Shown piece after piece: positions 329-23,619 of a DNA stretch of 64,000 nt (the stretch's first letter is position 1; the number at the start of each line of letters is the position of its first letter). Below the pieces are notes generated by a model. That model worked only from the letters and a program-made list of their open reading frames with translations. It had not been told where the DNA came from and made no database searches. The translations under genes were made by a program, and so were the position numbers. Location of the stretch: IMG/VR virus record IMGVR_UViG_3300005613_000002, positions 186,001-250,000 of that record; one strand, 5' to 3'.

Positions 329-640
329 ATGTTATCAATTCAAGAACATTTACAAAGGGATATTAATAATAATAAAAGTATTGCTTGGTGGGCAAAAGGT
401 TTTTATATTTCAAAAGGTGGTGAACATGGTTTTGATTTAAAGATACCTTTTTTTGCTTTTAATAATAACATTGACGAATTAAAACCAAATGATACAACTA
501 AAGTATTAGTTGATTATTTGGGTTCAATGGTTTGGGTCAATGTACTAGTACATTGGTTGCATTATGGTTATGGTGTTGAAAATTCACCAAGTAAAGAGGG
601 AAAACTTATCAGATACCAATTAGAAAATTTAAAGAATTAA
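329..640 (+). CDS. hypothetical protein
   Basis: Co-oriented ORF; no family recognised. Confidence 0.7.
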   Translation: MLSIQEHLQRDINNNKSIAWWAKGFYISKGGEHGFDLKIPFFAFNNNIDELKPNDTTKVLVDYLGSMVWVNVLVHWLHYGYGVENSPSKEGKLIRYQLENLKN

Positions 641-641
641 A

Positions 642-670
642 TGTAACAATGTTCATTAAAAAACGTATAA
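642..670 (+). promoter_or_regulatory. ECF-type phage promoter
   Basis: TGTAAC-N16-CGTATAA. Confidence 0.85.
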
Positions 671-698
671 TAAGTATAACAATTTAAAACTTACAATA

Positions 699-959
699 AT
701 GGCAAAAGTAACAACAAAAAAAGAAGTTAGACCTTTATATGAGATTGCAAATGACATTGAAAAGGATTGGAAAAATATGTATTTTGGTGCAGTTCCTTAT
801 TTTCAAGCCATGCAAACATTAAATAGTATTGAAGATGACTATATACATGATTCAGCTAAAAGCATTGTACTTTATTTCTTATCCAATGCTGGAACTTGGA
901 AGGGTGAAAAAGCTAGGGAAATCAAAAAGGAATTAAAAAAATTAGCTGGTGTTAAGTAA
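699..959 (+). CDS. conserved phage hypothetical protein
   Basis: RPLYEIA..I.KDW...YFGA.PY..AM...SIV.YFLSNA.TW.G motif recalled from widespread small phage proteins; downstream of promoter. Confidence 0.75.
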   Translation: MAKVTTKKEVRPLYEIANDIEKDWKNMYFGAVPYFQAMQTLNSIEDDYIHDSAKSIVLYFLSNAGTWKGEKAREIKKELKKLAGVK

Positions 960-990
960 GTGTTTCACTAGTTGATTGGAGGGAAACCTT

Positions 991-1024
991 AAAAGGGGGA
1001 AGTATTAATTTACTTTCCCCTTTT
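991..1024 (+). terminator. intrinsic terminator
   Basis: AAAAGGGGGAAGTA-TTAATT-TACTTTCCCCTTTT hairpin. Confidence 0.75.
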
Positions 1025-1071
1025 GCTTTTAAAATAGTGATAGCACAACAATAAAAATAGTAAGTGAACAA

Positions 1072-1100
1072 TGTAACAATAGTGGTCAATGTCCGTATAA
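1072..1100 (+). promoter_or_regulatory. ECF-type phage promoter
   Basis: TGTAAC-N16-CGTATAA; only an 8-codon ORF follows. Confidence 0.8.
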
Positions 1101-1171
1101 TAAGTATGAAATATAAAGTAATGTACAAATAAGATATTAAACTTTTGTTTACTTTTATTGTAAGTGTGTTT

Positions 1172-1210
1172 AAAGGGTGAATCATTTAACCAGAATGACA
1201 CCCTTTTTTT
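1172..1210 (+). terminator. intrinsic terminator abutting next promoter
   Basis: AAAGGGTG..TCATT/AATGA-CACCCTTT stem plus U-tract running into TGTAAC. Confidence 0.7.
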
Positions 1211-1239
1211 TGTAACCTTTTTTAATTAAAAACGTATAA
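1211..1239 (+). promoter_or_regulatory. ECF-type phage promoter
   Basis: TGTAAC-N16-CGTATAA. Confidence 0.85.
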
Positions 1240-1266
1240 TAAGTATAACAATTAAAACATACGACA

Positions 1267-1602
1267 ATGAAAATTTTAACAAAAGAAATCGAAAAAGCAT
1301 TTAAAAAACAGGGTGATACTTCACAATGTTCAATGTCCGAGATTAAGATAGTAATGAAACTTTTTGGTGGTGGTTCATTTACTTGGTATCTATATGAACA
1401 TCTTGAAGGTGATATTTACATGGCATTTGTTAATCTTGGTGATAGTGAAATGGCTGAATGTGGTACTGTATCATTGTCTGAGATACAAGCGATTAAATTC
1501 CCTCCATTTGGTTTAGGTGTTGAAAGAGATATGCACTTCAAACCATTGTCCAGAACATTAAAAGATGTTTATGATACTGTTAAATCTGGTGGTCATGTGT
1601 AA
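1267..1602 (+). CDS. DUF2958-family protein
   Basis: KLFGGGSFTWYLYE...LG..EMAECGTVSLSEI..I..P.GLGVERD.HF pattern. Confidence 0.75.
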   Translation: MKILTKEIEKAFKKQGDTSQCSMSEIKIVMKLFGGGSFTWYLYEHLEGDIYMAFVNLGDSEMAECGTVSLSEIQAIKFPPFGLGVERDMHFKPLSRTLKDVYDTVKSGGHV

Positions 1603-1816
1603 TACAATATATCTTAAAATAGGTAAAAAATATAAAACTAGAAATGGTTTAATTACTGAACCATTAATTAAATCCAATAATGGAACTAGTTATATTTTTG
1701 AATCAAAACTTAATGAGCCAGAATTTAAAAGTCCTTCAGTTAGGGAGTGGTTAAAGAATGGAAAGTTTCTAATTGCTGGACATAATCACAGATTAGATTT
1801 AGTTGAGGAAATATAA
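1595..1816 (+). CDS. hypothetical protein
   Basis: ATG overlapping upstream stop; start moved from 1565. Confidence 0.65.
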   Translation: MCNTIYLKIGKKYKTRNGLITEPLIKSNNGTSYIFESKLNEPEFKSPSVREWLKNGKFLIAGHNHRLDLVEEI

Positions 1817-1841
1817 AGTATTCAATATACAATAATATTAT

Positions 1842-1872
1842 AAAAGGGTTGCACGAAAGTGTAACCTTTTTT
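1842..1872 (+). terminator. intrinsic terminator whose 3' arm is the -35 box
   Basis: GGTTGCAC-GAAA-GTGTAACC-TTTTTT. Confidence 0.8.
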
Positions 1873-1888
1873 AATTAAAAACGTATAA
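1860..1888 (+). promoter_or_regulatory. ECF-type phage promoter
   Basis: TGTAAC-N16-CGTATAA. Confidence 0.85.
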
Positions 1889-1893
1889 TAAGT

Positions 1894-2013
1894 ATGGTAA
1901 CAAAAGAAATAAATAGACCAACGACATTAAAGGAATACAATCAATCATTATTAACTGATGATAAATTGTTGAGTGGTAAAGAATTTCGTAGATTGAAACG
2001 TAAAAGACTTTAA
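1894..2013 (+). CDS. small basic protein, 39 aa, probably leaderless
   Basis: MVTKEINRPTT...FRRLKRKRL; ATG 12 nt after the C of the -10 box. Confidence 0.6.
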   Translation: MVTKEINRPTTLKEYNQSLLTDDKLLSGKEFRRLKRKRL

Positions 2014-2015
2014 TT

Positions 2016-2372
2016 ATGAAAGACACATTAACAGATGAACAGATTAATGATTTAATTGTAACAGCAATTGAAGGTGGTATTAATTATTGGTGTTGGCAAG
2101 TTTCATTAAAAGAAGGAACAATTAAACCAGAACAACAATCAAAACTAAGATATTTATCTGATTGTATTTCCCTTGGTGGTACATTAATATTACATGATGC
2201 TGAAAGTTCTGAATCATGGGAATTAACAAAAGAAAAGTTCTTAAAAGGGATTGAAAAGACTTTAGAATGGGGTGGTAGTGCTAATGTTCAAGATTTATTT
2301 GATAACCACGATGCAGACGTTGCAGACGTTTTAATTCAATTCTCAATATTTGATAAAATAGTCTTTGGATAG
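2016..2372 (+). CDS. conserved phage hypothetical protein
   Basis: TAIEGGINYW...DADVADVLIQ..IF..IVFG motif recalled from phage proteins. Confidence 0.75.
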   Translation: MKDTLTDEQINDLIVTAIEGGINYWCWQVSLKEGTIKPEQQSKLRYLSDCISLGGTLILHDAESSESWELTKEKFLKGIEKTLEWGGSANVQDLFDNHDADVADVLIQFSIFDKIVFG

Positions 2373-2373
2373 T

Positions 2374-2402
2374 TGTAACTATTTTTTATTAAAAACGTAT
2401 AA
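2374..2402 (+). promoter_or_regulatory. ECF-type phage promoter
   Basis: TGTAAC-N16-CGTATAA. Confidence 0.85.
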
Positions 2403-2407
2403 CTATT

Positions 2408-2758
2408 ATGAGCGACAAATTAGATACACAAGAATTTTATGAAGTGATGCAACAGTATCGACATTCAAATGCTAACAATCAGGAACAAGTTGTTAAATCT
2501 TTTGAAAATGTTAAAACTTGGATTCGTGATAATTTTCTTGGTGAAGTTGAAAAGAAAGTTGAGGGTTGCCCAGAATGGTTAACTTCTGATGTTCGTAAAC
2601 TTGTAAAGGAAACATGGGATAGTCATAAGGTTTGTAATGATGGTTTGACCATTAAAGCAATGAGAATAGTTCAAGCAACAGCAAAAGAAGCTGGTTATGA
2701 AATTGGTATTTCCAAAGCAATGGACTTAATGAAAGAATATTGTAATATTTACGATTAA
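2408..2758 (+). CDS. hypothetical protein, probably leaderless
   Basis: ATG 12 nt after the -10 C. Confidence 0.7.
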   Translation: MSDKLDTQEFYEVMQQYRHSNANNQEQVVKSFENVKTWIRDNFLGEVEKKVEGCPEWLTSDVRKLVKETWDSHKVCNDGLTIKAMRIVQATAKEAGYEIGISKAMDLMKEYCNIYD

Positions 2759-2762
2759 AGTC

Positions 2763-2978
2763 ATGGTTAAAACATTAGACAATACAGATAAAAACATTAA
2801 AGACTTAGAAAGTCAGGGTTATGTTAAAAGTAGTGTAAGCAAACCATTTAATTATAATAAGGTATTAAGATATGATACTAAACGTATGGTATACTGGTTT
2901 AGTTCAAGTACTGCTGCACATATGAGTGATTGTTTTTTTACTAGACAAAATGTTGGTACTATAATTATAGGTTTTTAG
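2763..2978 (+). CDS. hypothetical protein
   Basis: Co-oriented ORF. Confidence 0.6.
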   Translation: MVKTLDNTDKNIKDLESQGYVKSSVSKPFNYNKVLRYDTKRMVYWFSSSTAAHMSDCFFTRQNVGTIIIGF

Positions 2979-2979
2979 T

Positions 2980-3008
2980 TGTAACCTTTTTTAATTAAAA
3001 ACGTATAA
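2980..3008 (+). promoter_or_regulatory. ECF-type phage promoter
   Basis: TGTAAC-N16-CGTATAA. Confidence 0.85.
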
Positions 3009-3036
3009 TTATTATAACACACTAAAAGTAAATATC

Positions 3037-3348
3037 ATGGATTTATTTGAAACATTAGGAAAGACATTAAAACCTGTAACAACATTAACTAAAGAATTTA
3101 AGGTTGGGGCAGTATCAGTAAATTCCAATTCATTTGGATTAAAGCAAATGATTATGGTTGCCAAAGATGGAACAGCATTTAAGGCATGTTTTAATTATTT
3201 GAATGTGAAGAAAGAAAAGGAAACTATTAATGCTTCTATAATTTTAAATGAAGATGGAAAAGTAATATCAACTTCATTTGTTGGTGGTGAATTAATTGAA
3301 CAAATCAGTGATGCACCAAAAGAAATAATTGAAGAACTCTGGAATTAA
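3037..3348 (+). CDS. hypothetical protein
   Basis: First gene after promoter. Confidence 0.7.
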   Translation: MDLFETLGKTLKPVTTLTKEFKVGAVSVNSNSFGLKQMIMVAKDGTAFKACFNYLNVKKEKETINASIILNEDGKVISTSFVGGELIEQISDAPKEIIEELWN

Positions 3349-3359
3349 AAATAACAGTA

Positions 3360-3572
3360 ATGGAAATTTTAAAAATAAAACAATTAGAACATAGTGGAAT
3401 AGGTAATAATGCTATTCATATTAAAGTGATTGATAAGTTTAGAAAATCAAAAGAAGATGGATTGAAATATTGTAAACTCAAAGGTTTTGATGTTTCTATA
3501 ACTGATGTTTTATTAACAGTAAAACAAAATGTAATGTATGGGTTTAAAATGTCTGCATTAATTACTAATTAG
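3360..3572 (+). CDS. hypothetical protein
   Basis: Co-oriented ORF. Confidence 0.65.
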   Translation: MEILKIKQLEHSGIGNNAIHIKVIDKFRKSKEDGLKYCKLKGFDVSITDVLLTVKQNVMYGFKMSALITN

Positions 3573-3573
3573 T

Positions 3574-3602
3574 TGTAACTATTTTTAATTAAAAACGTAT
3601 AA
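3574..3602 (+). promoter_or_regulatory. ECF-type phage promoter
   Basis: TGTAAC-N16-CGTATAA. Confidence 0.85.
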
Positions 3603-3626
3603 CTATTATAACTAAAACACAAAGTT

Positions 3627-3944
3627 ATGAAAAAGCAATTAAAAGAAATATTGAATAATTGTCCACTTTCTGCTAAATGGTTAAATATGAGAGAATGGCA
3701 AAAAGAAAAATTCTCTACAGTTTTTGAAATGTGTGAAAATGAAAATATTAAAATTCACAATCGAAATCAAAAAGGTTGTTCAGGATTATTGAAAATATAT
3801 TACGATTATGGACAAATGAGAGTGATTAGATTTTCAAGCATTAGTAATATTGAAGCTGATTTGGTTAATTTGTATGCACAAAAATGTTTATATTTAGGTG
3901 ATAAATTTAAAATAACTCACAGACTTAGGAACTATTCAAATTAA
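3627..3944 (+). CDS. hypothetical protein
   Basis: First gene after promoter. Confidence 0.7.
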   Translation: MKKQLKEILNNCPLSAKWLNMREWQKEKFSTVFEMCENENIKIHNRNQKGCSGLLKIYYDYGQMRVIRFSSISNIEADLVNLYAQKCLYLGDKFKITHRLRNYSN

Positions 3945-3954
3945 AAATATACCA

Positions 3955-4149
3955 ATGAAATCAATAAACGTAAAGAATTTACAAATTCAGTTTGATAGCT
4001 TTGACGAAGGAGCAGACAAACACACGGCATTAAACATGCTTGAAGAAATCAATGGTGCATTACAAGAAAGATTCCCAGAGAACACACCTCAAATTTTTGT
4101 TGGTGCAGTTGATGACGATGACATTGAAATAGCAGATTGTAAAGAATAA
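3955..4149 (+). CDS. small acidic hypothetical protein
   Basis: Co-oriented ORF. Confidence 0.65.
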   Translation: MKSINVKNLQIQFDSFDEGADKHTALNMLEEINGALQERFPENTPQIFVGAVDDDDIEIADCKE

Positions 4150-4154
4150 TCATA

Positions 4155-4310
4155 ATGAGACCATTTAGCACTGATAATTTCAAACATAAAGAAATTCTAA
4201 GGAGTACGACAAAAACAGCAAAATTAGTAGCAAAAAATGCTGATAGGTCGAAAAAGAAAACTGTAAGGAATAGATTAAAAAATGAAATGAATAGGGAATT
4301 GGATAATTAA
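4155..4310 (+). CDS. small basic protein, 51 aa
   Basis: MRPFSTDNFKHKE...; fills the gap, not in ORF track. Confidence 0.55.
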   Translation: MRPFSTDNFKHKEILRSTTKTAKLVAKNADRSKKKTVRNRLKNEMNRELDN

Positions 4311-4331
4311 AATTTGTTACAGTTTTTAATT

Positions 4332-4364
4332 AAAAAGGTTGCATGAAAGTGTAACCTTTTTTTT
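4332..4364 (+). terminator. intrinsic terminator whose 3' arm is the -35 box
   Basis: GGTTGCAT-GAAA-GTGTAACC-TTTTTTTT. Confidence 0.8.
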
Positions 4365-4378
4365 GTTATTACGTATAA
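4350..4378 (+). promoter_or_regulatory. ECF-type phage promoter
   Basis: TGTAAC-N16-CGTATAA; no ORF follows. Confidence 0.8.
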
Positions 4379-4383
4379 TAATT

Positions 4384-4437
4384 AGGCTGGATAATACTAG
4401 GGTGCAGTAATCCACTCCTGCCTGAAAGTCTGACTTT
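4384..4437 (+). ncRNA. candidate small structured RNA
   Basis: GC-rich island starting at predicted +1; nested stems AGGC/GCCT, TGGAT/ATCCA, TACT/AGTA; possible loop pseudoknot AGGG/TCCT. Confidence 0.5.
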
Positions 4438-4481
4438 AGAATCATTCTACATTAATACTATAAATCTTTTTAATTAAAAAC

Positions 4482-4510
4482 TGTAACAAATTTTAATTAG
4501 AAACGTATAA
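4482..4510 (+). promoter_or_regulatory. ECF-type phage promoter
   Basis: TGTAAC-N16-CGTATAA. Confidence 0.85.
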
Positions 4511-4538
4511 TAAGTATAACATTTAAAGATATACTATC

Positions 4539-5429
4539 ATGACAAAAAAAGTAAAAAAAGGAACAGAAATTTGCACAATTGAAGACTTAATGTTTCCAGT
4601 TGAAATGAGGGAAGAAACTATGGCTTGTAATAAAGAGTATTGCCGTAGGATTGTTGGTCAAATTAATGGTGAAGACTTTTTATTGAATCAGTGTTCAGAT
4701 GTTTATACATTGATTGAAAATAAGGATATCTTTCCAATGATTGAAGAAGTGCTAACTAACAATAAAGTTGAGTTTACACCAACTTACAAACATTTAAACC
4801 ATGTTCGTTTCTATGCTGATTATGATATTACTGATACCCGTTTTGGTTATCAAATGAAAGATTCATTTGATGTTATTCGACCAATGTTGAGGGTTCAACA
4901 CAGTTATAACGGTTTAACCAAGTATAAAATTATCTTTGGTTATTTCAGGTTGGTTTGTTCTAATGGTTTGGTAATTCCAATTGAAGAAATGAAAGAATTC
5001 AATTTGGCAATTGTTGGAAAACACACCGAAGTAATTCTAAAATCATTTGATGACTTGAATGAGGTGCTTATTCGTTTCACAAATGAAGCTGAAAAAATCA
5101 CGGGTGCAATTGTTAATAAATTTGAGGTTCTTCGTAGTAGGGTTCGTTCAACAACAAAAAATGTTGAAGATAGGATTGAAGAAATTTTTAAAGCTACAAA
5201 AATGTCACTTGTGGATAATAAAAATTTCAGTACAATGAATACCCTAATGTCCATAATCAGGGAAGAAGCAAATAAAACTGAATTAGGTTATGATGGTCAA
5301 ATAAATGACTGGTTGATTTACAATGCTATCAACCAATATTTAAATGATGACTCACGTAATATTGCAACACCTGAAACTAGAATGGACAAAGATTCAAAGG
5401 TGTTTGAATATATGTTACAATATGCTTAA
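4539..5429 (+). CDS. DUF932-family protein
   Basis: LRVQHSYNG...GYFRLVCSNGLV signature. Confidence 0.75.
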   Translation: MTKKVKKGTEICTIEDLMFPVEMREETMACNKEYCRRIVGQINGEDFLLNQCSDVYTLIENKDIFPMIEEVLTNNKVEFTPTYKHLNHVRFYADYDITDTRFGYQMKDSFDVIRPMLRVQHSYNGLTKYKIIFGYFRLVCSNGLVIPIEEMKEFNLAIVGKHTEVILKSFDDLNEVLIRFTNEAEKITGAIVNKFEVLRSRVRSTTKNVEDRIEEIFKATKMSLVDNKNFSTMNTLMSIIREEANKTELGYDGQINDWLIYNAINQYLNDDSRNIATPETRMDKDSKVFEYMLQYA

Positions 5430-5448
5430 TCTGAGCAATGTACAATAT

Positions 5449-16329: not shown

Positions 16330-18654
16330 ATGGAAATTAATTTACTAGAATTAAGTACACAAGGTGTTGAAAGTACAACCACTGCAAGAAAAATGGGAAT
16401 GTCAAAGAATGCACAATCAATGGTATTCCAATTGTTTACAAAAAATGTATATTCTAATCCAATTGGTACAGTTGTACGTGAAATTACTTCCAATTGTTTT
16501 GATAGCCATGTTGAAGCCAAAGTTAAATCTCCTGTACTTATCAAGAAAACCTATGATGAACAAACTAAAACACATTATATATCATTTATTGATTTTGGTG
16601 TTGGTATGTCAGAAGAAAGGATTTATGAGATTTATGGTGTATATTTTGAAAGTACCAAACGTGTTGATAATACACAAATTGGTGGTTTTGGAATTGGTGG
16701 TAAAACTCCATTAGCATATAAACGTTCAACAGGTCAAGGTGATGGTGAATATGATAATAGCTTTTATATTATCACTAATTATAATGGTACTCGTTATTAC
16801 TATTGCATATATGAAGGTGCTGATGCTCCTGTAATTTCCCCTTTACATTCTGAACCAACAACAGAAAGAAACGGAACTGAAATTCGTATTCCAGTTTTAG
16901 AAAAAGATATGGATGACTTTGCTAAAGAAATGGTACGTCAACTTTATTATTTTGAAGATGTTATTTTTGAAGGTTTTGAAGATGCTTGGAGGCATGGTGA
17001 AACCTTATCAAATGAGTATCAAATATTCAGAGGTAAAACATTCTTATTTAGAGGTGACGATTATTTGAGCAATGTACATATATGTTTGGGTAGAGTTGCT
17101 TACCCAATTGATTATTCTGTTTTAGGTTTATCTTCTGGTGAATATAATTTACCAGTTGCAATTAGACTTGAAGTTGGAGATTTAAATGTTACAGTTTCAA
17201 GGGAAAGTATTGATTATAGTGAGTCTACAATCAAGATGTTAAAAAAGAAATTGGTTGAGGTGAAAACTGAAATTATTGGAATGATGGTGAAACAATATGA
17301 AAATATTGTTACCCTTGAAGATTATTTCAAAATGAAAACCGATTTTGGAAACTATACTTTTAGCAATGGGAAAAGTATTTCAGTTGGAAATGTTGTTAAA
17401 GAAAAAGATATTGATTTTACAAATTTCAATTTCAGTTTCATGAAAATGCCAACAGATAAACAATTGTTTAATTTGTTCTTCAATGTTAAATCTTATGGTA
17501 AAAAACCTAATAGAAGTCGTTATGGTAGTAGTAGTAATGAATTCGAAGGTGGTTATAAAGAATTACTTTCAAGTTCAAACCTTTATCATTTTAATAACGT
17601 TTTTAATCGTAAGGTTATTAAACAATCTTATTTAAAATCAGAACACATATTGTACCATATCATTAATCGTGAAAATTTGTCACAACCACATTTGCGTCAT
17701 AAGATTACTGAATTGTTCAATGTACATTTAGATTCACTTGTTGATGAAAATGGTGTTCCTGTTCAATTTGTTCAATCATTAATGGCAATGCAGGATGAAT
17801 ATTTTACCATTGTACAAGATCAAACTGTATGTTACGATACTTTGGAAGTTCCAGAAGATTTTATTGCAGAAAGAAAGAACCGTAATAAAATCACTGATGA
17901 TATGAGGAAATTAACATTTCCAATAAAATTCATGTGTGAATATTCTGGAAGTCCTACAAGAGTAAAACTAGATCATTTATTTAAATTTAATATGCCTATC
18001 TTTTATGGTACTACTGACGATGAATTTAAATTAGAAAAAGCTAGTAAAATATATAGACATTTGTTTAATGAGAAATTTTTAATAACTGGTTATTCTGAAT
18101 ATGGTTATAACAATAGTGTTGATAAATTTAATAGAGTAGGACATGATTCAACACAAAAAGCTGGAATTATGTTTATCAGAATAGCAAAAGGAAATGTTAA
18201 ATATATGAAGTTTTGCAAAAATGCAAATCATATTGATACTGTTTATGATAAACTATTCAAACGTAAAGAAAAAGTAGTTTTGAATTATTTTAAAACTTAT
18301 CAATTATTTAATAGTTATAATAATCTGGATGATTTATATAAAGATAAACATTTTGGATTAATTGATGAAAATTGGGGTGAAACAATTATTAAACTCAATA
18401 CTGATATTACTAAAATTAAGGATTCTTTATTGGTGAAAGATTTGGAATATATTGAATCATCATTAAGTCATTATTTTAATATTGATAGAAATAAAATTGA
18501 TAAGAAATACGATAAATTAATAAAAGCTATTGATGATCTGGTAATGTTGGAAGAAGTAAATAAAGATATTGTTGAATTTATTCGTATTCCACATAGTTTA
18601 GAATATGGAAATAAAAAACTATTTCCACTATTGAAAAAAGTAATGATATTATAA
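16330..18654 (+). CDS. rIIA: RIIA-like protein with N-terminal GHKL ATPase domain
   Basis: VYSNPIGTVVREITSNCFDS, FIDFGVGMS, GGFGIGGK, SRESI; adjacent to rIIB-like gene. Confidence 0.85.
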   Translation: MEINLLELSTQGVESTTTARKMGMSKNAQSMVFQLFTKNVYSNPIGTVVREITSNCFDSHVEAKVKSPVLIKKTYDEQTKTHYISFIDFGVGMSEERIYEIYGVYFESTKRVDNTQIGGFGIGGKTPLAYKRSTGQGDGEYDNSFYIITNYNGTRYYYCIYEGADAPVISPLHSEPTTERNGTEIRIPVLEKDMDDFAKEMVRQLYYFEDVIFEGFEDAWRHGETLSNEYQIFRGKTFLFRGDDYLSNVHICLGRVAYPIDYSVLGLSSGEYNLPVAIRLEVGDLNVTVSRESIDYSESTIKMLKKKLVEVKTEIIGMMVKQYENIVTLEDYFKMKTDFGNYTFSNGKSISVGNVVKEKDIDFTNFNFSFMKMPTDKQLFNLFFNVKSYGKKPNRSRYGSSSNEFEGGYKELLSSSNLYHFNNVFNRKVIKQSYLKSEHILYHIINRENLSQPHLRHKITELFNVHLDSLVDENGVPVQFVQSLMAMQDEYFTIVQDQTVCYDTLEVPEDFIAERKNRNKITDDMRKLTFPIKFMCEYSGSPTRVKLDHLFKFNMPIFYGTTDDEFKLEKASKIYRHLFNEKFLITGYSEYGYNNSVDKFNRVGHDSTQKAGIMFIRIAKGNVKYMKFCKNANHIDTVYDKLFKRKEKVVLNYFKTYQLFNSYNNLDDLYKDKHFGLIDENWGETIIKLNTDITKIKDSLLVKDLEYIESSLSHYFNIDRNKIDKKYDKLIKAIDDLVMLEEVNKDIVEFIRIPHSLEYGNKKLFPLLKKVMIL

Positions 18655-18666
18655 TCATTACTTTTT
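18635..18666 (+). terminator. hairpin at rIIA stop fused to next -35
   Basis: AAAAAGTAATGAT/ATCATTACTTTTT perfect 13 bp. Confidence 0.6.
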
Positions 18667-18694
18667 GTAACAAAATTTTAATTAATACGTATAA
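18666..18694 (+). promoter_or_regulatory. ECF-type phage promoter
   Basis: TGTAAC-N16-CGTATAA. Confidence 0.85.
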
Positions 18695-18726
18695 TAATAA
18701 ACAAACATTAATAAACAATAATAATC

Positions 18727-19923
18727 ATGAAAAACATTCAAGGTGTAAAAATCGGAAATGTTGTAAATCTATCAATTGATGGTAGACTTTGCAAAAAGAA
18801 TTGTGGTAGTCCAGAAGAAGCAGATGAACTTTTTCGTTTGGTACTAAAAGCAAAAGAAAACCCAACGGATGAAAATGTGAAAAACATTCGTGTTTATCTG
18901 AATGAACAAACTCGTATTGCAATGCTTGCTGGATTAGAATCAGATGTAGATACTGGTGAAGTATTCTTAGCTGGCTTTAATACTCCTGTACCTGAAACTC
19001 TTTTGGAAGTTATTAAAGAGTACCATGAAAATAAGTATCCTTTAGATGCTGTTATCAATTTCTGGAAACTCTTAATGATTAATCCAGATACACGTGTTCG
19101 AACTTCATTGTTTGATTTTATTAAATCACATGACTTTGTTTTAACTGATAAAGGTTATATGGTGGTTTATAAAGCAGTTTACTTGAAAGAAGCAAAAGTA
19201 AACACACCTGAGAAAAAATATGTGGAATTCCTTTCAAACAAATATCTTCATGTGAAAAAAACATGGAAATGTTCACCTAACAAATATGTGGCATATAAAA
19301 TTCTTGAAGATAATTCATATGGAATTACCAAAACAGTAACTGCTGAAAAATGGGATGAAAAGGAAAAGAACATTGAAATCTTAGGTAAACTTGGTGACTT
19401 ACATAAAGCCATTATTGAAAATAAGGTTGAAGTTAAAGAAGACCTAGCACCATTGTACACCGATATGTATTCAAAAACTATGAGTATCCAACTTGGTGTA
19501 CCAGTTTGTCAAGAAAGAAAAGATTGTAATGGAAATCCAAAAATAGAATGTTCTGATGGTTTGCATTGTGGTGCAACAAAATATGTTGAAAACTATGCAA
19601 ATAGAAGTTCTGCAATCTTAGCTTGTTTTGTTAATCCTGCAAATGTAGTTGCTGTTCCAGATTACGATAAATCAAAAATGCGTACCTGTGAATATTTCCC
19701 TTTTGCAGTTGCAACATTCGAAAATAAAAAGATTGACATTATTGAACAATCATATTTTGAAGAAGATTATTGCAATTATGAATCTACCGAATTAGAAAAA
19801 CAAATTGCAAAGATCAAAGCAAATGAACTTCCAATTGCAACAGCAAAGAAAGCTGAAAAGGAAACCCGACCAATGGTCGAACTTATGAAAATACTTGAAA
19901 CAAGATTAGTTGATATTGTGTAA
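18727..19923 (+). CDS. rIIB: RIIB-like protein
   Basis: LINFW..LM.NP, LTDKG..V.YKAV, CSDGLHCG..KY, VNPANVVAVP.YD.SKMRTCEY. Confidence 0.85.
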   Translation: MKNIQGVKIGNVVNLSIDGRLCKKNCGSPEEADELFRLVLKAKENPTDENVKNIRVYLNEQTRIAMLAGLESDVDTGEVFLAGFNTPVPETLLEVIKEYHENKYPLDAVINFWKLLMINPDTRVRTSLFDFIKSHDFVLTDKGYMVVYKAVYLKEAKVNTPEKKYVEFLSNKYLHVKKTWKCSPNKYVAYKILEDNSYGITKTVTAEKWDEKEKNIEILGKLGDLHKAIIENKVEVKEDLAPLYTDMYSKTMSIQLGVPVCQERKDCNGNPKIECSDGLHCGATKYVENYANRSSAILACFVNPANVVAVPDYDKSKMRTCEYFPFAVATFENKKIDIIEQSYFEEDYCNYESTELEKQIAKIKANELPIATAKKAEKETRPMVELMKILETRLVDIV

Positions 19924-19933
19924 TGTTTGTGTT

Positions 19934-19965
19934 AAACCTTCCTGTATAATGTACAGGGAGGTTTT
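19934..19965 (+). terminator. intrinsic terminator
   Basis: AAACCTTCCTGTA/TACAGGGAGGTTT. Confidence 0.7.
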
Positions 19966-20013
19966 AGTTTATTAACAAACATTAAGGGTAATAATCGTTT
20001 TAATTAAAAAAAT

Positions 20014-20292
20014 ATGAGTAAAATATATTTATCAGCAGACATAAGGGAAATTAATAGTTTTAACTTTACAGTTGAAGTTGATGATAATCTACCTATAACA
20101 AAAGCAGTTGAAGTTGCTAAAGATAAATTAAAAGCACATCTGGATGTTCAATGTCCAAACCCTTTACAAAGTTCACCAGATAAGAATGGAATTCATTGTT
20201 ATGATTGTGAAGGTTCTGTTGAAACCGAAGACACCGTTTCTATTGATGTAAATAATACATTACATAAAATTCAATCGATAACAACAAAATAA
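20014..20292 (+). CDS. hypothetical protein
   Basis: Co-oriented ORF. Confidence 0.65.
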   Translation: MSKIYLSADIREINSFNFTVEVDDNLPITKAVEVAKDKLKAHLDVQCPNPLQSSPDKNGIHCYDCEGSVETEDTVSIDVNNTLHKIQSITTK

Positions 20293-20297
20293 TTATC

Positions 20298-20777
20298 ATG
20301 GATATCAATACTAAAAGAAAATATAAAAAAATTAGTAAAAATTTATATAAAGCAGCTACTAGTTGTATTGTATTATTTTTTATTGTTCTAATTGTATTAG
20401 GAACAAAAAAAATTGACGCATCAAATTTAAATGCTGCTTGGGGTATGGTAATAATTATGTCACCAATATTCATTGGGTTATTCTTTGCTTTCTTTGGTGC
20501 TATATATTATGAATATTTCAATAGCTATCATAAAAAAGTTATTGAATATCGTAAACGTTTCCATATTACCAAGATTTATGAATTTATTGATATTGGTGAT
20601 TTCGAGAAAGCTATTCCTATCTATAACAATCTTAAACAAAGTATGGATAAGGATATGTTGTACATCTATTTAATTAAATCTTCAATGGATTCAGATGACC
20701 CCAAACAAAAAGCTAAAGGTTTAGAGAATTATAATGTTATACGCAACTGGTATGATGTTGAAAAAGTTTTTAATTAA
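20298..20777 (+). CDS. two-TM membrane protein
   Basis: Two hydrophobic helices at N-terminus. Confidence 0.7.
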   Translation: MDINTKRKYKKISKNLYKAATSCIVLFFIVLIVLGTKKIDASNLNAAWGMVIIMSPIFIGLFFAFFGAIYYEYFNSYHKKVIEYRKRFHITKIYEFIDIGDFEKAIPIYNNLKQSMDKDMLYIYLIKSSMDSDDPKQKAKGLENYNVIRNWYDVEKVFN

Positions 20778-20779
20778 TA

Positions 20780-21028
20780 ATGGCTAACAGAAAATCAGGA
20801 AAAGAACTTAGAAAGGAATATCAAGACCTTCTGGATAAGACCAAGGCAATGCGTAAACGCATTATTAAAAGAGCAGAAGATTTAATTAAAAGATATCCAA
20901 ATGTTGTTGTAAATGATTTTGATCTATATAAACTAAATATACAAGCAGCAATGTCCATTATTGAAAAAATTGAAGAACATATTGCTGACAAACATCCACA
21001 TCAACAAACTAAAATGTTTAACACTTAA
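20780..21028 (+). CDS. hypothetical protein
   Basis: Co-oriented ORF. Confidence 0.7.
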   Translation: MANRKSGKELRKEYQDLLDKTKAMRKRIIKRAEDLIKRYPNVVVNDFDLYKLNIQAAMSIIEKIEEHIADKHPHQQTKMFNT

Positions 21029-21038
21029 AAAATACATA

Positions 21039-21449
21039 ATGAAAAAAGCTAAAGTATTAGAAATAAAAACTTCAGAAATAAAAACTTCAGTAAATAGAAT
21101 TACTGAAAAAGTAATTCTTTTAGAAAAAAAGAATAAAGATTTTTTCTTGAAAGTCAATTCATTATTATATAATCCAATATATAATGGCTTCCATGAACTT
21201 AGAAAAATCAATGATGATGATACTGTTGTCATTAGTGATTGTTGTAATTATCTTATTGACGCAACAACAACTATCTCCAATAATAAAGTAAAGGTTGATT
21301 ATTTAACTAAACTAAAACCAGTTTATAAACTTCATAATTTTATGGAATATTGTAATACTGTTAAGGCGTGGAGAGTTAAAAAAAGTTTAGGACATAAATC
21401 ATACTTGTTCTATAAAGATATTAATGTTATTAATATCTTCGAACATTAG
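21039..21449 (+). CDS. hypothetical protein
   Basis: Start moved from 20961 to avoid overlap. Confidence 0.65.
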   Translation: MKKAKVLEIKTSEIKTSVNRITEKVILLEKKNKDFFLKVNSLLYNPIYNGFHELRKINDDDTVVISDCCNYLIDATTTISNNKVKVDYLTKLKPVYKLHNFMEYCNTVKAWRVKKSLGHKSYLFYKDINVINIFEH

Positions 21450-21452
21450 ATA

Positions 21453-21620
21453 ATGTACAGAATATCTAAGAACATAAGAAAGTTTAGCTCAACACCCATT
21501 GTACGACCATACAAAGATGATAAGGGTAAAGAGAAAGAACAAATGGTTTGTGTATGCATTGGTAAGAAAAAAGAAGCTGATGCTTTAGCATTAAAAATTG
21601 TTGAACTATTAAATCAATAA
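21453..21620 (+). CDS. small protein, 55 aa
   Basis: MYRISKNIRK...; fills the gap. Confidence 0.55.
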   Translation: MYRISKNIRKFSSTPIVRPYKDDKGKEKEQMVCVCIGKKKEADALALKIVELLNQ

Positions 21621-21621
21621 T

Positions 21622-21864
21622 ATGACACACGAAGACTTACTTGAAATTGGTTTTAAACTATATGGTGAAACAGAAAATGACCCATACTATAAACTAATCT
21701 ATAGACCACCATTTAATTTTGGTATTACTTCTTTATCTGGTGTGTTCTTAGGATTAAATAATACCGAATTTTATCTTTATAATAACAACACTAGATATAC
21801 TGATAAAAAAGAGTTAAAAACATTAGTTAATATACTAGGAAATGAAATATATGGTATTGATTAA
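21622..21864 (+). CDS. hypothetical protein
   Basis: Co-oriented ORF. Confidence 0.65.
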   Translation: MTHEDLLEIGFKLYGETENDPYYKLIYRPPFNFGITSLSGVFLGLNNTEFYLYNNNTRYTDKKELKTLVNILGNEIYGID

Positions 21865-21895
21865 TGTTAAATCATAACAAATTAAATAAAATATC

Positions 21896-22039
21896 ATGAA
21901 CGATAAATCAAGAGACTGGTGGAACATGCAATCTTTAGATAACCAAATCTGGTTATTAATGAAACATGGGTTTGAAAACTTTAATCCTAAGAATGTGAAA
22001 CTTGAACAAATATCAAAATTATATAAATTAGAGCATTAA
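21896..22039 (+). CDS. small protein, 47 aa
   Basis: MNDKSRDWWN...; not in ORF track. Confidence 0.55.
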   Translation: MNDKSRDWWNMQSLDNQIWLLMKHGFENFNPKNVKLEQISKLYKLEH

Positions 22040-22131
22040 ACTTATAAACTGAAAGCTCAGACCCTAGTAAGAACAACTTTCAGTTTAATAGAATAATGTA
22101 CGTTTTACTTACAGATTAATAATTTTAAACT

Positions 22132-22599
22132 ATGATTAAATATATTAAAGGTGATGCAACATCACCAGTAGGAGAAGGAAATAAAGTAATAGCACATATT
22201 TCTAATGATGTTGGTGGTTGGGGTGCAGGTTTCGTATTAGCATTATCCAAGAGGTGGATACAACCTGAAGCACATTATCGTGCTGAAGCTAAAAAACTAA
22301 CCAAAGAGAACCCATACTTAACTCTGGGTGATGTACAGTTTGTACAAGTTGAAAATAATATTGTTGTTGCTAATATGATAGGACAACACCTAACTGTCTC
22401 AAGAACAAAAGAAACCCCAATTAGATATGAAGCAGTTAAAAAATGCTTAGAAGAAGTAAATGAATTCTGTATGTTAAATAACGCAACACTTCATGCACCA
22501 AGATTCGGTTCAGGTTTAGCTGGTGGTGATTGGAATAAGATTGAAGCAATCATTAATTCCACAATGTCCGTTGATGTTACTATATACGATTTTAATTAA
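22132..22599 (+). CDS. macrodomain (Appr-1-p / ADP-ribose processing) protein
   Basis: IKGDAT, IAHISNDVGGWGAGFV.A, PRFGSGLAGGDW. Confidence 0.9.
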   Translation: MIKYIKGDATSPVGEGNKVIAHISNDVGGWGAGFVLALSKRWIQPEAHYRAEAKKLTKENPYLTLGDVQFVQVENNIVVANMIGQHLTVSRTKETPIRYEAVKKCLEEVNEFCMLNNATLHAPRFGSGLAGGDWNKIEAIINSTMSVDVTIYDFN

Positions 22600-22610
22600 A
22601 AAAGGTTACA
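22582..22610 (-). promoter_or_regulatory. ECF-type promoter, antisense to macrodomain gene
   Basis: Minus strand TGTAAC-CTTTTTTAATTAAAAT-CGTATAT. Confidence 0.75.
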
Positions 22611-22633
22611 AATATTATTAACTAAAAACTTAT

Positions 22634-22918
22634 ATGAGTAGAATTGTTAATTACAAAGACGATAGATTATGTTTCGTTTCAGGATTAGATCATGTTTTAG
22701 GAAAGTTTATTCAACTATATGATAACGAAATTGAAACACCTGATGGTGAAGGAATTGTTTTAGATTGGACTGAACGTTTCGGAATATCAATTAACCTAAC
22801 TGGAGAATCAATAAGTAATAATGAACATGAAGTTCTAATGATGATTAGTAAATATCTCTCAAAACATAACAAAGAATTAATCATTATTACTGCCGAACAA
22901 CAAAACAATCTAAATTAA
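22634..22918 (+). CDS. hypothetical protein
   Basis: Co-oriented ORF. Confidence 0.7.
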   Translation: MSRIVNYKDDRLCFVSGLDHVLGKFIQLYDNEIETPDGEGIVLDWTERFGISINLTGESISNNEHEVLMMISKYLSKHNKELIIITAEQQNNLN

Positions 22919-22999
22919 TCATAAGCCGAATGTAATTCATATTGATATTTTTATTACATTTACATTACGATAAAATAATTCCAATAATTAGAGAGATAT

Positions 23000-23464
23000 A
23001 TGACTAGAAGAAAAAAAGAATACTCCCCTGAAGAAAACACAACATTTAATACTACCAATAATTATAACATAGAACTAGAGTTTAACCTTATCAATCATGA
23101 TAAAGAATTATCAGATGCTGAAGATGCTATCGAAACATTAAAGCTGAAGGTCATTGAAATTATTATTAATGAAACCTTAGACGATAATGTACATGAAGAA
23201 TTCTATGAGGAAATAATGAGAGTGCTCGACTATACAGGTAGACTATCAATGCAAATATTCGCAATTAATGACTTGCTTGAAGAACAATACCTGAAGAAAT
23301 ATAAAAACGCTCCTGCAATGGCTAAAGAATTATGGCTTAACCATTATGAACAATTACACCAACCATATAACAAAATTAAAAATAGATGCTTTAAACTCTT
23401 AGATCGTTTAGATAATGGTTATGTCGCATTGTACGATAAGAACCCTCCTAACTGGAATCCATAA
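23000..23464 (+). CDS. helical hypothetical protein
   Basis: Last + strand gene. Confidence 0.75.
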   Translation: MTRRKKEYSPEENTTFNTTNNYNIELEFNLINHDKELSDAEDAIETLKLKVIEIIINETLDDNVHEEFYEEIMRVLDYTGRLSMQIFAINDLLEEQYLKKYKNAPAMAKELWLNHYEQLHQPYNKIKNRCFKLLDRLDNGYVALYDKNPPNWNP

Positions 23465-23518
23465 TGTACAATCTAAAAAATAATTGTAGTTCATCACATT
23501 AATGCTACAGTGTTCTCG

Positions 23519-23556
23519 AATGTCCAGTTTATTTAATTATTTACTGGACATTTTTT
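23519..23556 (+). terminator. terminator closing + block
   Basis: AATGTCCAGT/ACTGGACATT plus U-tract. Confidence 0.7.
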
Positions 23557-23561
23557 ATTCA

Positions 23562-23619
23562 CCATTGTACACAAACTCTACAACACCCATTGTACACCTA
23601 ATATATTTTACCATTGTAC
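23562..23619 (+). repeat. three CCATTGTAC direct repeats, 24-25 bp period
   Basis: Copies at 23562, 23587, 23611. Confidence 0.8.

What the first reader, a model, noticed from the sequence alone, without database searches (positions are those of the whole stretch)
538..23619. Strand-polar 8-mer CAWTGTAC confined to the left gene block
Seen on +: CAATGTAC at 538, 5436, 7158, 9424, 13926, 14014, 14246, 14714, 17070, 17718 and CATTGTAC at 863, 17808, 19451, 21497, 23427, 23563, 23588, 23612. That is 18 copies in 24 kb versus roughly 1 expected from base composition (my estimate), with only one reverse copy noticed (5230) and none noticed in 24-64 kb. Copies fall in CDS and intergenic DNA. The longer form GAGCAATGTAC occurs 5 times and overlaps the -10 box of the 13999 and 14699 promoters. 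Inference: a binding or loading site (Chi/KOPS-like polarity, nucleoid or injection signal, or a regulator of the ncRNA promoter).
Basis: partly seen in the sequence, partly recalled or inferred. Interest (0 to 1): 0.6.

Follow-up and report, generated by a model that had tools for sequence, protein, structure and literature searches.

The report
Strand-specific signal marking a phage gene block
A short DNA word (core AWTGTAC) is packed onto the coding strand of one sigma-factor-headed gene block in a family of uncultivated giant phages. It is real, conserved and most likely read by the transcription machinery, but how it works is still open.

Summary
CAWTGTAC occurs 18 times on + within window 538-23619, twice on -, and never in 24-64 kb. 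In the 321.6-kb genome, 18 of 24 forward copies lie in these 23 kb. Codon-aware shuffles give 0.5-1.2 copies in CDS against 11 observed.

The true element is B-A-W-T-G-T-M-C-R. It is sense-strand-only (CAATGTAC 68:1 across five phages) and conserved in at least 10 related jumbo phages.

The domain always starts just downstream of a phage ECF-type sigma-factor gene (window 2-265). It ends at a convergent junction with a tandem array followed by a conserved AT-rich module.

In a subset the motif abuts the -10.

It is not Chi/KOPS-like: it covers one transcription block only and has no mirrored arm.

- **Best reading (about 0.35):** a -10-type single-element signal read by a phage sigma holoenzyme, acting as promoter or pause. 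Its core matches phiEco32 gp36 promoters (tAATGTAtA) and ECF -10 cores.
- **Rivals:** a dsDNA operator/iteron, an RNA-level element, or a polar DNA barrier.

No transcript data exist to decide between them.

The parts
1..23860 (+). Motif domain: the + strand gene block carrying all enriched copies. It holds 18 copies of the 8-mer, 31 of AWTGTAC and 44 of AWTGTMC.
2..265 (+). 3' part of the ECF-type sigma-factor gene (sigma-1). The full gene is G000:185,699-186,265 (188 aa) and is the first gene of the domain.
   Evidence: Sigma70_r2 63-65 bits and Sigma70_r4_2 35-38 bits. Orthologues head the motif domain in five relatives.
538..545 (+). CAATGTAC inside ORF 329-640. It is one half of the 18-bp palindrome CAATGTACTAGTACATTG.
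548..555 (-). Reverse copy that forms the other half of the palindrome.
863..870 (+). CATTGTAC in ORF 699-959.
1073..1101 (+). Class II promoter with the variant CAATGTCC abutting GTATAAT. It drives a short ORF-less transcript that itself carries AATGTAC at 1120 and ends at the 1175-1210 terminator.
5230..5237 (-). Isolated reverse copy, at background frequency.
5436..5443 (+). GAGCAATGTAC lying between the stop codon of ORF 4539-5429 and its terminator hairpin.
7158..7165 (+). CAATGTAC at codons 4-6 of ORF 7148-7357.
9424..9431 (+). CAATGTAC in ORF 8487-9737. The orthologue in G001 carries CATTGTAC 6 nt away, in another frame.
13926..13933 (+). CAATGTAC, 88 nt upstream of the 14014 copy.
14000..14028 (+). 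Class II promoter GTAAC-N17-GTATAAT with GAGCAATGTAC (14011-14021) filling the -10-proximal spacer. It drives ORF 14052-14537.
14246..14253 (+). GAGCAATGTAC inside ORF 14052-14537.
14700..14728 (+). Class II promoter with GAGCAATGTAC (14711-14721). It drives an ORF-poor stretch of about 400 nt ending at the terminator near 15120-15150.
15151..15179 (+). Class II promoter with the one-mismatch variant GAGCAATCTAC.
17070..17077 (+). GAGCAATGTAC in rIIA (16330-18654).
17718..17725 (+). CAATGTAC in rIIA at alignment column 503. A copy recurs at this column in five rIIA genes: this phage and four relatives.
17808..17815 (+). CATTGTAC in rIIA. Relatives carry a copy at column 548 or at 552 in another phase.
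19451..19458 (+). CATTGTAC in rIIB-like ORF 18727-19923.
21497..21504 (+). CATTGTAC in ORF 21453-21620.
23427..23434 (+). CATTGTAC near the end of the last + ORF (23000-23464).
23519..23619 (+). Terminal array: AATGTCC in the 5' arm of the last terminator hairpin, then three CCATTGTAC copies spaced 25 and 24 bp. A further AATGTAC overlaps the stop codon at 23463.
23620..24100 (.). Conserved noncoding module after the array: AT-rich TATAAAA repeats, a G-rich box (GGCGTGTGGGG), a CTGATAATCAG palindrome and TAGTACA repeats (ATTGTAC at 23850). It lies at the convergent junction with the - block.

Best explanation
CAWTGTAC is the core of a self-contained, asymmetric signal of about 9 nt, B-A-W-T-G-T-M-C-R. 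It marks the non-template (sense) strand of one transcription block in a clade of T4-related jumbo phages, which probably infect Bacteroidota. The block begins with a phage ECF-type sigma-factor gene and ends at a convergent junction.

I think it is most likely a -10-type element read by RNA polymerase carrying a phage-encoded sigma factor. In that reading it is a single-element promoter and/or a sigma-dependent pause site that fires or acts co-directionally with the genes. Three arrangements would follow from this:
- Where it abuts or follows the CGTATAAT -10 of the ECF-type cassettes, it would give those genes a second, differently timed start.
- Dispersed copies would keep the whole block under that holoenzyme.
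- Tandem arrays upstream of the AT-rich module would act as a strong entry point, for a non-coding RNA or for a transcription-primed origin of the T4/T7 kind.

Shown by the analysis:
- the motif, its polarity, its extent and its conservation;
- its registers at promoters;
- the sigma genes and the promoter family.

For: (1) Strict co-orientation with transcription. CAATGTAC is 68 sense to 1 antisense across five phages. Antisense copies are at shuffle expectation.

(2) The domain is a transcription unit, not a replichore. A sigma-1 orthologue lies directly upstream on the same strand in six genomes. The motif stops at the convergent junction in nine phages, with none beyond on either strand.

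(3) The element is self-contained. 363 sites outside class II promoters show no information beyond position -1 (not A) and +1 (purine), and no -35 partner. The phage's own late promoters (aGTATTTATa) are also single elements.

(4) Sequence precedent. phiEco32 sigma gp36 recognises single-element promoters tAATGTAtA, core AATGTA, with starts 6-8 bp downstream (PMC8948821 and PMC12276001).

(5) The tolerated A/C at position 7 (TGTA/TGTC) mirrors the CGTA/CGTC alternation of ECF -10 elements (PMC5758882).

(6) The phage encodes two ECF-type sigma factors. About 50 cassettes of the form tGTAAC-n-TTTT...CGTATAAT are textbook ECF promoters.

(7) Registers at promoters are fixed. 24 of 64 promoter-proximal copies end exactly on the C of CGTA, and 16 sit 4-10 nt after the start of GTATAAT. 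This is as expected for overlapping dual starts.

(8) There is a weak A excess 7-8 nt downstream of the motif: 47% against 37%.

(9) The motif is enriched in noncoding DNA and in the -100 to -10 region before start codons: 104 observed against 62 expected.
Against: - 61% of copies lie inside CDS, often several hundred nt from the next start.
- Promoter-less intergenic gaps carry the motif only slightly more often than gaps with an ECF promoter: 23% against 15%, p = 0.09.
- Several copies sit 5-20 nt upstream of intrinsic terminators, where a start would be futile.
- Arrays of 3-10 copies spaced 12-27 bp are odd for promoters.
- Both phage sigmas have region 4 and so would be expected to need a -35. 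No gp36 homologue was found.
- The fixed register at the -10 could be a by-product of the shared 'AC'.
- There are no transcript data.
Confidence: 0.35

Rival explanations
1. The motif is an operator or iteron for a sequence-specific double-stranded-DNA-binding protein, either a regulator of this block or a replication initiator. In this reading the copies flanking the -10 repress or tune a subset of promoters. The arrays next to the AT-rich module form an origin or a regulatory hub.
For: - Copies bracket the -10 on one or both sides in several promoters.
- Dense direct-repeat arrays are followed by a conserved AT-rich module with further conserved boxes in at least five phages.
- Copy density does not drop after intrinsic terminators: 3.8/kb upstream against 4.5/kb downstream.
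- The motif is tolerated inside terminator stems.
Against: - A dsDNA binder does not explain why roughly 240 intragenic copies are enriched about 10-20-fold on the sense strand only.
- Array spacings of 12-16 and 22-27 bp are off the helical repeat that is typical of iterons.
- No DNA-binding candidate was found among the 45 ORFs of the block.
Confidence: 0.25
2. The motif is an RNA-level element, AWUGUMC, in the transcripts of this block. It would be a binding or cleavage site for an RNA-binding protein or endoribonuclease that sets the stability or translation of this gene class. This resembles T4 RegB acting on early mRNAs. The arrays would act as a high-affinity target or sponge within a non-coding RNA.
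For: - Sense-only distribution across CDS, UTRs and ORF-less transcripts.
- Position is flexible and frame changes at orthologous places.
- Arrays in G001, G002, L235 and L261 lie just downstream of a promoter.
- Array spacings of 12-16 nt fit single-strand binding better than helical phasing.
- The fixed register at promoters could come from the shared 'AC' of the promoter consensus.
Against: - Density is as high just after intrinsic terminators as before them.
- In G000, L233 and L251 the array follows the last terminator.
- Many copies lie between a terminator and the next -10.
- Some copies are paired within hairpin stems.
- There is no peak at start codons.
- No RegA homologue was found.
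Confidence: 0.2
3. The motif is a polar DNA signal read by a translocating or replicating machine. It could be Chi/KOPS-like guidance or protection. It could also be a one-way replication-fork or read-through barrier that shields the block from head-on traffic, or a strand-specific nicking site. The terminal array would be the strongest point.
For: - Extreme strand skew, density-type distribution and flexible positions.
- A threefold density peak in the last 2 kb before the convergent junction in all nine phages examined, with an abrupt stop beyond it.
- Strand-specific recognition is inherent to Ter sites, Chi and nickases (own knowledge).
Against: - The motif is confined to 20-45 kb of genomes of about 300-365 kb.
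- There is no mirrored arm in the convergent block.
- The domain starts at a sigma gene rather than at any replication landmark.
- Copies sit in fixed register with promoters.
- In L261 and G001 the main array is in mid-block, not at the junction.
- No physical genome end is known.
Confidence: 0.08
4. There is no function: the pattern is a by-product of duplicated promoter cassettes, codon usage or paralogous peptides.
For: - The block is full of repeated terminator-promoter cassettes.
- Five copies share the longer word GAGCAATGTAC.
- Some AATGTCC copies are simply arms of GC-rich terminator stems.
Against: - Flanks of the copies differ.
- Copies lie in two or three reading phases with unrelated peptides.
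- Codon-aware shuffles never reach the observed counts.
- Only the 8-mer is conserved within otherwise different spacers across phages whose terminase is 70-82% identical.
- The same polar cluster exists in at least 10 relatives.
Confidence: 0.02

Closest known systems
Single-element middle/late promoters of phage phiEco32, read by its sigma factor gp36 (tAATGTAtA; PMC8948821, PMC12276001)
   Same: - The core AATGTA is identical.
- It is one element of 8-9 bp with no -35 partner.
- The sigma factor is phage-encoded.
- The element is co-directional with the genes it serves.
   Different: - phiEco32 has six such promoters, each upstream of a gene. Here there are about 30-45 copies in 24 kb, most of them inside genes, plus tandem arrays.
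- Positions 7-8 differ (C-R here, t-A in phiEco32).
- No gp36 homologue was detected.
- Both sigmas of this phage keep region 4.
ECF sigma-factor promoters (B. subtilis sigmaW/X/M/V type: tGAAACnTTTt - spacer - CGTA/CGTC; PMC5758882)
   Same: - The roughly 50 cassettes TGTAAC-C-TTTTTT...-CGTATAAT fit this pattern, including the T-tract next to the -35.
- The motif core TGT[A/C]C resembles the -10 core.
- Spacer sequence is known to tune which sigma uses a promoter. The motif replaces part of the spacer in the class II cassettes.
   Different: The dispersed motif copies have no AAC element 16-17 bp upstream, so they are not bipartite ECF promoters.
PeSLs, the composite terminator / early-promoter cassettes of T4-type phages (PMC2839356, PMC4122927)
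   Same: Repeated cassettes of about 70 bp, each a terminator stem-loop plus a promoter, flank small variable ORFs in a T4-related phage.
   Different: - Here the promoters are of ECF type rather than sigma70 type.
- PeSLs explain the cassettes, not the dispersed polar 8-mer.
KOPS (FtsK) and Chi (RecBCD/AddAB) polar octamers
   Same: They are short and strongly strand-skewed, occur in coding and noncoding DNA, and work through density rather than exact position.
   Different: - KOPS and Chi are chromosome-wide and switch strand at the origin and terminus. This motif covers one transcription block, has no mirrored arm, and begins at a sigma gene.
- KOPS and Chi are G-rich; this motif is not (own knowledge for their sequences).
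Transcription-primed phage origins (T7 primary origin: tandem promoters plus an AT-rich segment; T4 oriF/oriG: middle promoter plus unwinding element; own knowledge)
   Same: Tandem copies of a putative promoter element lie directly upstream of a conserved AT-rich segment.
   Different: - There is no evidence here that replication starts at this place.
- 3-10 copies is more than in any described origin of this type.
T4 RegB / RegA control of early mRNAs (own knowledge)
   Same: A short sense-strand word characterises one temporal class of transcripts.
   Different: - RegB and RegA sites sit at ribosome-binding sites or start codons. This motif shows no such peak.
- No RegA homologue is present.

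Membership tests
Chi/KOPS-type polar architecture sequences | Distribution over the whole chromosome or replichore, with the skew switching at the origin and terminus | tested here: not met
   18 of 24 forward copies lie in 23 kb of 321.6 kb. The convergent block has no copies on its own sense strand.
Chi/KOPS-type polar architecture sequences | Strong strand skew in both coding and noncoding DNA | tested here: met
   68:1 for CAATGTAC across five phages. 11 CDS and 7 noncoding copies in the window.
Chi/KOPS-type polar architecture sequences | Recognition by a DNA translocase or nuclease | not testable with these tools
   This needs biochemistry.
Single-element phage sigma promoters (phiEco32 gp36 type) | Conserved 8-9-bp element with core AATGTA and no -35 partner | tested here: met
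   Consensus B-A-W-T-G-T-M-C-R. No flanking information in 363 sites. Literature consensus.
Single-element phage sigma promoters (phiEco32 gp36 type) | Phage-encoded sigma factor lacking region 4, homologous to gp36 | tested here: not met
   Two phage sigmas are present, but both have regions 2 and 4. gp36 finds nothing in the genome.
Single-element phage sigma promoters (phiEco32 gp36 type) | Located upstream of genes, with transcripts starting 6-8 bp downstream | tested here: inconclusive
   Noncoding density is 2.6 times that of coding DNA and there is an excess before start codons. However, 61% of copies lie in CDS, and promoter-less gaps are only weakly enriched. No RNA runs are available.
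Bipartite ECF sigma promoters | -35 AAC element 16-17 bp upstream of a CGT-type -10 | tested here: not met
   This holds for the TGTAAC-N17-CGTATAAT cassettes but not for the motif itself, which has no upstream partner.
Iterons / operators of a dsDNA-binding protein | Direct-repeat arrays in noncoding DNA next to an AT-rich region or overlapping promoters | tested here: met
   Arrays of 3-10 copies followed by the AT-rich module. Copies flank the -10.
Iterons / operators of a dsDNA-binding protein | Helically phased spacing of about 11 or 22 bp, and no requirement for one strand within genes | tested here: not met
   Spacings cluster at 12-16 and 22-27 bp. Intragenic copies are on the sense strand only.
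RegB/RegA-like RNA-level control of early mRNAs | Sites at ribosome-binding sites or start codons of the regulated genes, and a cognate protein gene | tested here: not met
   No peak at start codons (17 observed against 15 expected), and depletion just after them. There is no PF01818 hit.
RegB/RegA-like RNA-level control of early mRNAs | The motif is confined to transcribed sequence | tested here: inconclusive
   Density is equal before and after predicted terminators, but terminator efficiency is unknown.
PeSL terminator-promoter cassettes (applies to the surrounding cassettes, not to the 8-mer) | Repeated composite stem-loop plus promoter between small variable ORFs of a T4-type phage | tested here: met
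   About 26 cassettes in the window block. Terminase, portal and sheath are T4-like. Literature.

The most novel reading that the evidence does not exclude
The motif is a new kind of transcription-coupled 'domain mark'. In this reading it is a strand-specific word read on the non-template strand or nascent RNA throughout a 25-45-kb sigma-headed gene block. It would set the fate of that whole block (timing, processivity or shut-off). Its terminal array would double as an insulator or origin at the convergent junction. This would be a phage counterpart of ops/KOPS-type polar signals, working at the scale of a regulon rather than a promoter.
Probability: 0.2. Interest if true: 0.8.

Novelty: new variant of a known kind. 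Interest (0 to 1): 0.6.

Why it matters
Giant phages known only from metagenomes have almost no mapped regulation. This analysis recovers a coherent, testable transcription plan for one clade from sequence alone:
- about 50 ECF-type terminator-promoter cassettes;
- two phage sigma factors;
- a single-element late promoter;
- a conserved sense-strand word that singles out one block and ends in an array beside an AT-rich module.

If the word is a sigma-read element, it extends the phiEco32-type single-element promoter to a distant phage group and to an unusual, dense, intragenic use. If it is not, it is a polar signal of a kind not described for phages. Either outcome gives a handle for timing classes, origin mapping and synthetic control parts for Bacteroidota-type hosts.

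Tried and rejected
**Searches that found nothing**
- A megablast of the block against cultured phages found nothing.
- A single-protein rIIA scan of IMG/VR found nothing.
- An exact promoter-cassette pattern found nothing. A 14-nt version gave only chance single hits.
- Rfam and tRNA scans of the block were empty.
- No RNA run holds the sequence.
- A literature search for the motif strings returned only primers and unrelated hits.

**Known regulators not present**
- MotA, AsiA and RegA families are absent.
- phiEco32 gp36 has no detectable homologue.

**Search for the reader protein**
- Phylogenetic profiling failed. The apparently motif-negative relatives (L236, L239) do carry clusters elsewhere in their genomes.
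- ORFs specific to motif-rich regions were the GP88-family ORF 12054-12887, ORF 13253-13789, ORF 14052-14537 and ORF 22634-22918. They gave no informative family, atlas or fold lead.
- Pfam scans of most block ORFs found no DNA- or RNA-binding domain apart from the sigma factor. The third batch of ten failed on a bad coordinate and was not repeated, so seven small ORFs remain unscanned.

**Explanations rejected**
- Peptide repeat or codon artefact.
- A composite promoter with a fixed -10 or -35 partner.
- An sRNA target site: no ncRNA in the block carries the complement (and the map).
- An equivalent polar motif in the convergent block.
- A gradual density gradient toward the junction: there is only a terminal peak.
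- An apparent opposite-strand enrichment in distant relatives. In L245 this turned out to be the same-strand variant GTACAATGTCC. In L252 and L253 it remained uninterpretable.

Structure prediction, complex prediction and the large protein searches were not used, because no candidate justified them.

Full report
**1. The observation.**
There are none on either strand between 24 and 64 kb. Dinucleotide shuffles of the window give 4.55 +/- 2.04 copies on both strands against 20 observed.

The window is G000:186,001-250,000 of a 321,624-bp IMG/VR phage record. Genome-wide there are 24 forward and 5 reverse copies, and 18 of the forward ones lie in 186.5-209.6 kb.

An unbiased k-mer scan was run against the coding-strand-oriented remainder of the genome. 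It ranks the following among the most over-represented words of the block:

| Word | Observed | Expected |
|---|---|---|
| AATGTAC | 21 | 1.2 |
| CAATGTAC | 10 | 0.2 |
| CATTGTAC | 8 | 0.06 |
| CAATGTCC | 6 | 0.06 |

None of 1000 shuffles reaches 11. In noncoding DNA there are 7 copies against 0.1 expected. The antisense strand is at expectation. Copies lie in two reading phases and encode unrelated peptides, so this is not a protein repeat.

**2. What the element really is.**
A substitution scan over the homologous regions of five phages gives the following:
- CAATGTAC occurs 68 times on the sense strand and once on the antisense strand.
- Position 1 is loose (C > T > G, rarely A).
- Position 3 is A or T.
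- Position 7 is A or, less often, C.
- The base after the motif is a purine.

The core is therefore AWTGTMC, within B-A-W-T-G-T-M-C-R. There are 363 sites that are not followed by GTATA. In these, no other position within -30 to +45 carries information, and no TANNNT or AAC partner appears at any fixed distance.

**3. The genome and its transcription signals.**
The phage is a distant member of the T4 superfamily. It has sheath, portal and SbcCD-like proteins, ribonucleotide reductase and rIIA/rIIB. Its terminase is 25-28% identical to those of cyanophages and Flavobacterium phages. The 123-bp 'terminal repeat' lies inside a repetitive gene and is an assembly overlap.

The block contains about 26 near-identical cassettes: terminator, TGTAAC, T-tract, TTTTAATTAAAA, then CGTATAAT, then a conserved leader. 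The pattern GTAAC-N17-GTATA occurs 26 times on + in 180-210 kb and 24 times on - in 200-280 kb. The convergent - block therefore uses the same promoters, yet has no CAWTGTAC.

The cassettes match published ECF sigma promoters: tGAAACnTTTt, then a spacer, then CGTA or CGTC. In those promoters spacer sequence tunes sigma selectivity (PMC5758882). As composite terminator-promoter units, the cassettes also resemble the PeSLs of T4-type phages (PMC2839356, PMC4122927).

Structural genes are preceded by a different, single element, aGTATTTATa, 12-25 nt before the ATG.

The ORF cut by the left edge of the window (2-265) is the end of an ECF-type sigma factor, with region 2 and region 4 both above the Pfam cut-offs. 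A second such gene lies at about 294.2-294.7 kb. The nearest annotated relatives of sigma-1 are sigma factors of crAss-like and Prevotella phages. Together with the lack of Shine-Dalgarno sequences in the leaders, this points to a Bacteroidota host. That host assignment is inference.

**4. Conservation.**
A terminase search retrieved 80 related contigs at 70-82% identity, including whole genomes of 328-363 kb. CAWTGTAC forms a one-strand cluster of 20-45 kb in each of G001, G002, G003, G004, G007, G009 and G010, and a weak one in G006.

An rIIA profile retrieved 44 further loci. The closer ones (L233, L235, L237, L238, L250, L251, L256, L261) show 6-18 sense copies against 0-1 antisense.

In G000 and in five relatives, the sigma-1 orthologue sits on the same strand 0.3-5.6 kb upstream of the first cluster copy. 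In nine phages the domain runs to the convergent junction. Density there peaks at 3.2/kb in the last 2 kb, against about 1.1/kb elsewhere. It then falls to almost none on either strand: one or two stray copies in about 37 kb surveyed.

**5. Contexts.**
Of 535 AWTGTMC sites in 390 kb from 13 phages, only 64 lie near an ECF-type promoter, and those are in sharp registers. Twenty-four end exactly on the C of CGTATAAT; these are the 'class II' cassettes, including window 14000, 14700 and the variants at 1073 and 15151. Sixteen start 4-10 nt after the G of GTATAAT. Some promoters carry copies on both sides of the -10.

The other contexts are as follows:
- The 7-mer core AWTGTAC (386 sites) reaches 1.0/kb in CDS and 2.6/kb in noncoding DNA. 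It shows excesses around stop codons and before start codons, and a deficit just after starts.
- Density is the same before and after predicted intrinsic terminators. Several copies sit in terminator loops or stems, or 5-20 nt upstream of them.
- Tandem arrays of 3-10 copies are spaced 12-16 or 22-27 bp. They occur in noncoding DNA, usually after the last gene of the block, as at window 23519-23619.
- Each array is followed by a conserved module: AT-rich TATAAAA repeats, a G-rich box, a CTGATAATCAG-type palindrome and TAGTACA repeats.
- Within rIIA, copies recur at the same or neighbouring alignment columns in different phages, sometimes in another frame. This indicates selection on the nucleotide word.

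**6. Mechanism.**
Any explanation must account for six facts:
- the sense-only enrichment inside genes;
- the restriction to one sigma-headed block;
- the self-contained 9-nt signal;
- the fixed registers at promoters;
- the arrays beside an AT-rich module;
- the indifference to terminators.

The reading I favour is a -10-type element recognised by a phage sigma holoenzyme, acting as promoter and/or sigma-dependent pause. It has a close published precedent in phiEco32: tAATGTAtA, a single element, with starts 6-8 bp downstream. It fits the A/C tolerance of ECF -10 cores. It also fits the presence of two phage sigmas and the phage's use of another single-element promoter. Arrays upstream of an AT-rich segment would then resemble T7/T4-type transcription-primed origins (own knowledge).

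This reading fits poorly in several respects:
- Most copies are intragenic.
- Some copies sit just before terminators.
- The association with promoter-less gaps is weak.
- Both sigmas have a region 4.

I put it at about 0.35. A duplex-DNA operator or iteron (0.25) explains the arrays and the promoter overlaps but not the intragenic polarity. An RNA-level site (0.2) explains the polarity and the array spacing but not the terminator-independent density. A polar DNA barrier or guide (0.08) explains the polarity and the terminal peak but not the regulon-like extent. An artefact is excluded.

**7. Limits.**
- No transcript data exist for this phage.
- No reader protein could be identified.
- ORF and terminator calls are my own simple predictions.
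- The host is inferred.

Noticed in passing
window 2-265 (full gene G000:185,699-186,265) and G000:294,176-294,742 (-): Two phage-encoded ECF-type sigma factors, each with regions 2 and 4. The first heads the motif block. Its nearest annotated kin are sigma factors of crAss-like and Prevotella phages.
   Followed up: yes
window 643-18715 (+) and window 24-64 kb (-); genome 180-280 kb: About 50 near-identical terminator-promoter cassettes, TGTAAC-(C)TTTTTT-AATTAAAAA-CGTATAAT-AAGTATAAC-AATTTAAAAC. They are of ECF-promoter type and resemble PeSLs. In relatives the -35 GTAAC often sits in the loop of the preceding terminator hairpin.
   Followed up: partly
window block 1-24 kb, e.g. 1222-1233, 2991-3002, 5430-5535: The 12-bp palindrome TTTTAATTAAAA is enriched about 7-fold in the block (around 25 copies), both in class I promoter spacers and outside promoters. 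It may be an operator for a dimeric regulator.
   Followed up: no
genome-wide, e.g. G000:320,745(-), 312,774(-), 104,485(+), 85,783(+): A single-element late-type promoter, aGTATTTATa, lies 12-25 nt upstream of structural-gene start codons and has no -35 element.
   Followed up: partly
window 1102-1210; 4380-4480; 14730-15150; 16110-16330: ORF-less stretches lie downstream of strong promoters and end in terminators. The 14.7-kb one contains a tRNA-like T-arm (GGGGTTGAATTCCCC). The 4.4-kb one shares GGGTGCAGTAATCCA with G001. These are likely non-coding RNAs, with no Rfam match.
   Followed up: partly
window 23620-24100; L261 9650-9900; L235 16500-16900; G001 (L225) about 24850-25150: A conserved noncoding module follows the motif arrays: TATAAAA repeats, a G-rich box (CGTGTGGGG), a CTGATAATCAG-type palindrome and TAGTACA repeats. 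It is a candidate origin or other cis-acting hub.
   Followed up: partly
L239 2703-3070; L248 16389-16810: Related jumbo phages carry CRISPR-like arrays near rIIA: 36-bp repeats with a 66-bp period and unique spacers. In L239 the repeat is GTTGTAAACAACCACAAATTGAAAGGTACTTACAAC.
   Followed up: no
G000:120-186 kb (+): GGTTCGA-type T-loop words occur about 40 times, suggesting a large tRNA gene bank upstream of the motif block. This was not checked with a tRNA finder.
   Followed up: no
G000:280-321 kb (-) and record ends: Highly repetitive coding sequence (CAACTACA/GAGCCAAC words, about 30-50 copies) spans the record ends. The 123-bp 'DTR' lies inside it.
   Followed up: no
window 4539-5429, 5570-6052, 12054-12887, 22132-22599: The block encodes DUF932, SprT-like metallopeptidase, GP88-family and phosphatase/macro-like proteins. 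The run GP88-family ORF, ORF 13253-13789, ORF 14052-14537 keeps its order in several relatives.
   Followed up: partly
L280 970-1446 (G000:185,222-185,698): The divergent intergenic region upstream of the sigma-1 gene holds its own direct repeats (GTTATCTTTAATTAGTTAT twice, TGATACTAT three times). These may be early operators or a host-type promoter region.
   Followed up: no
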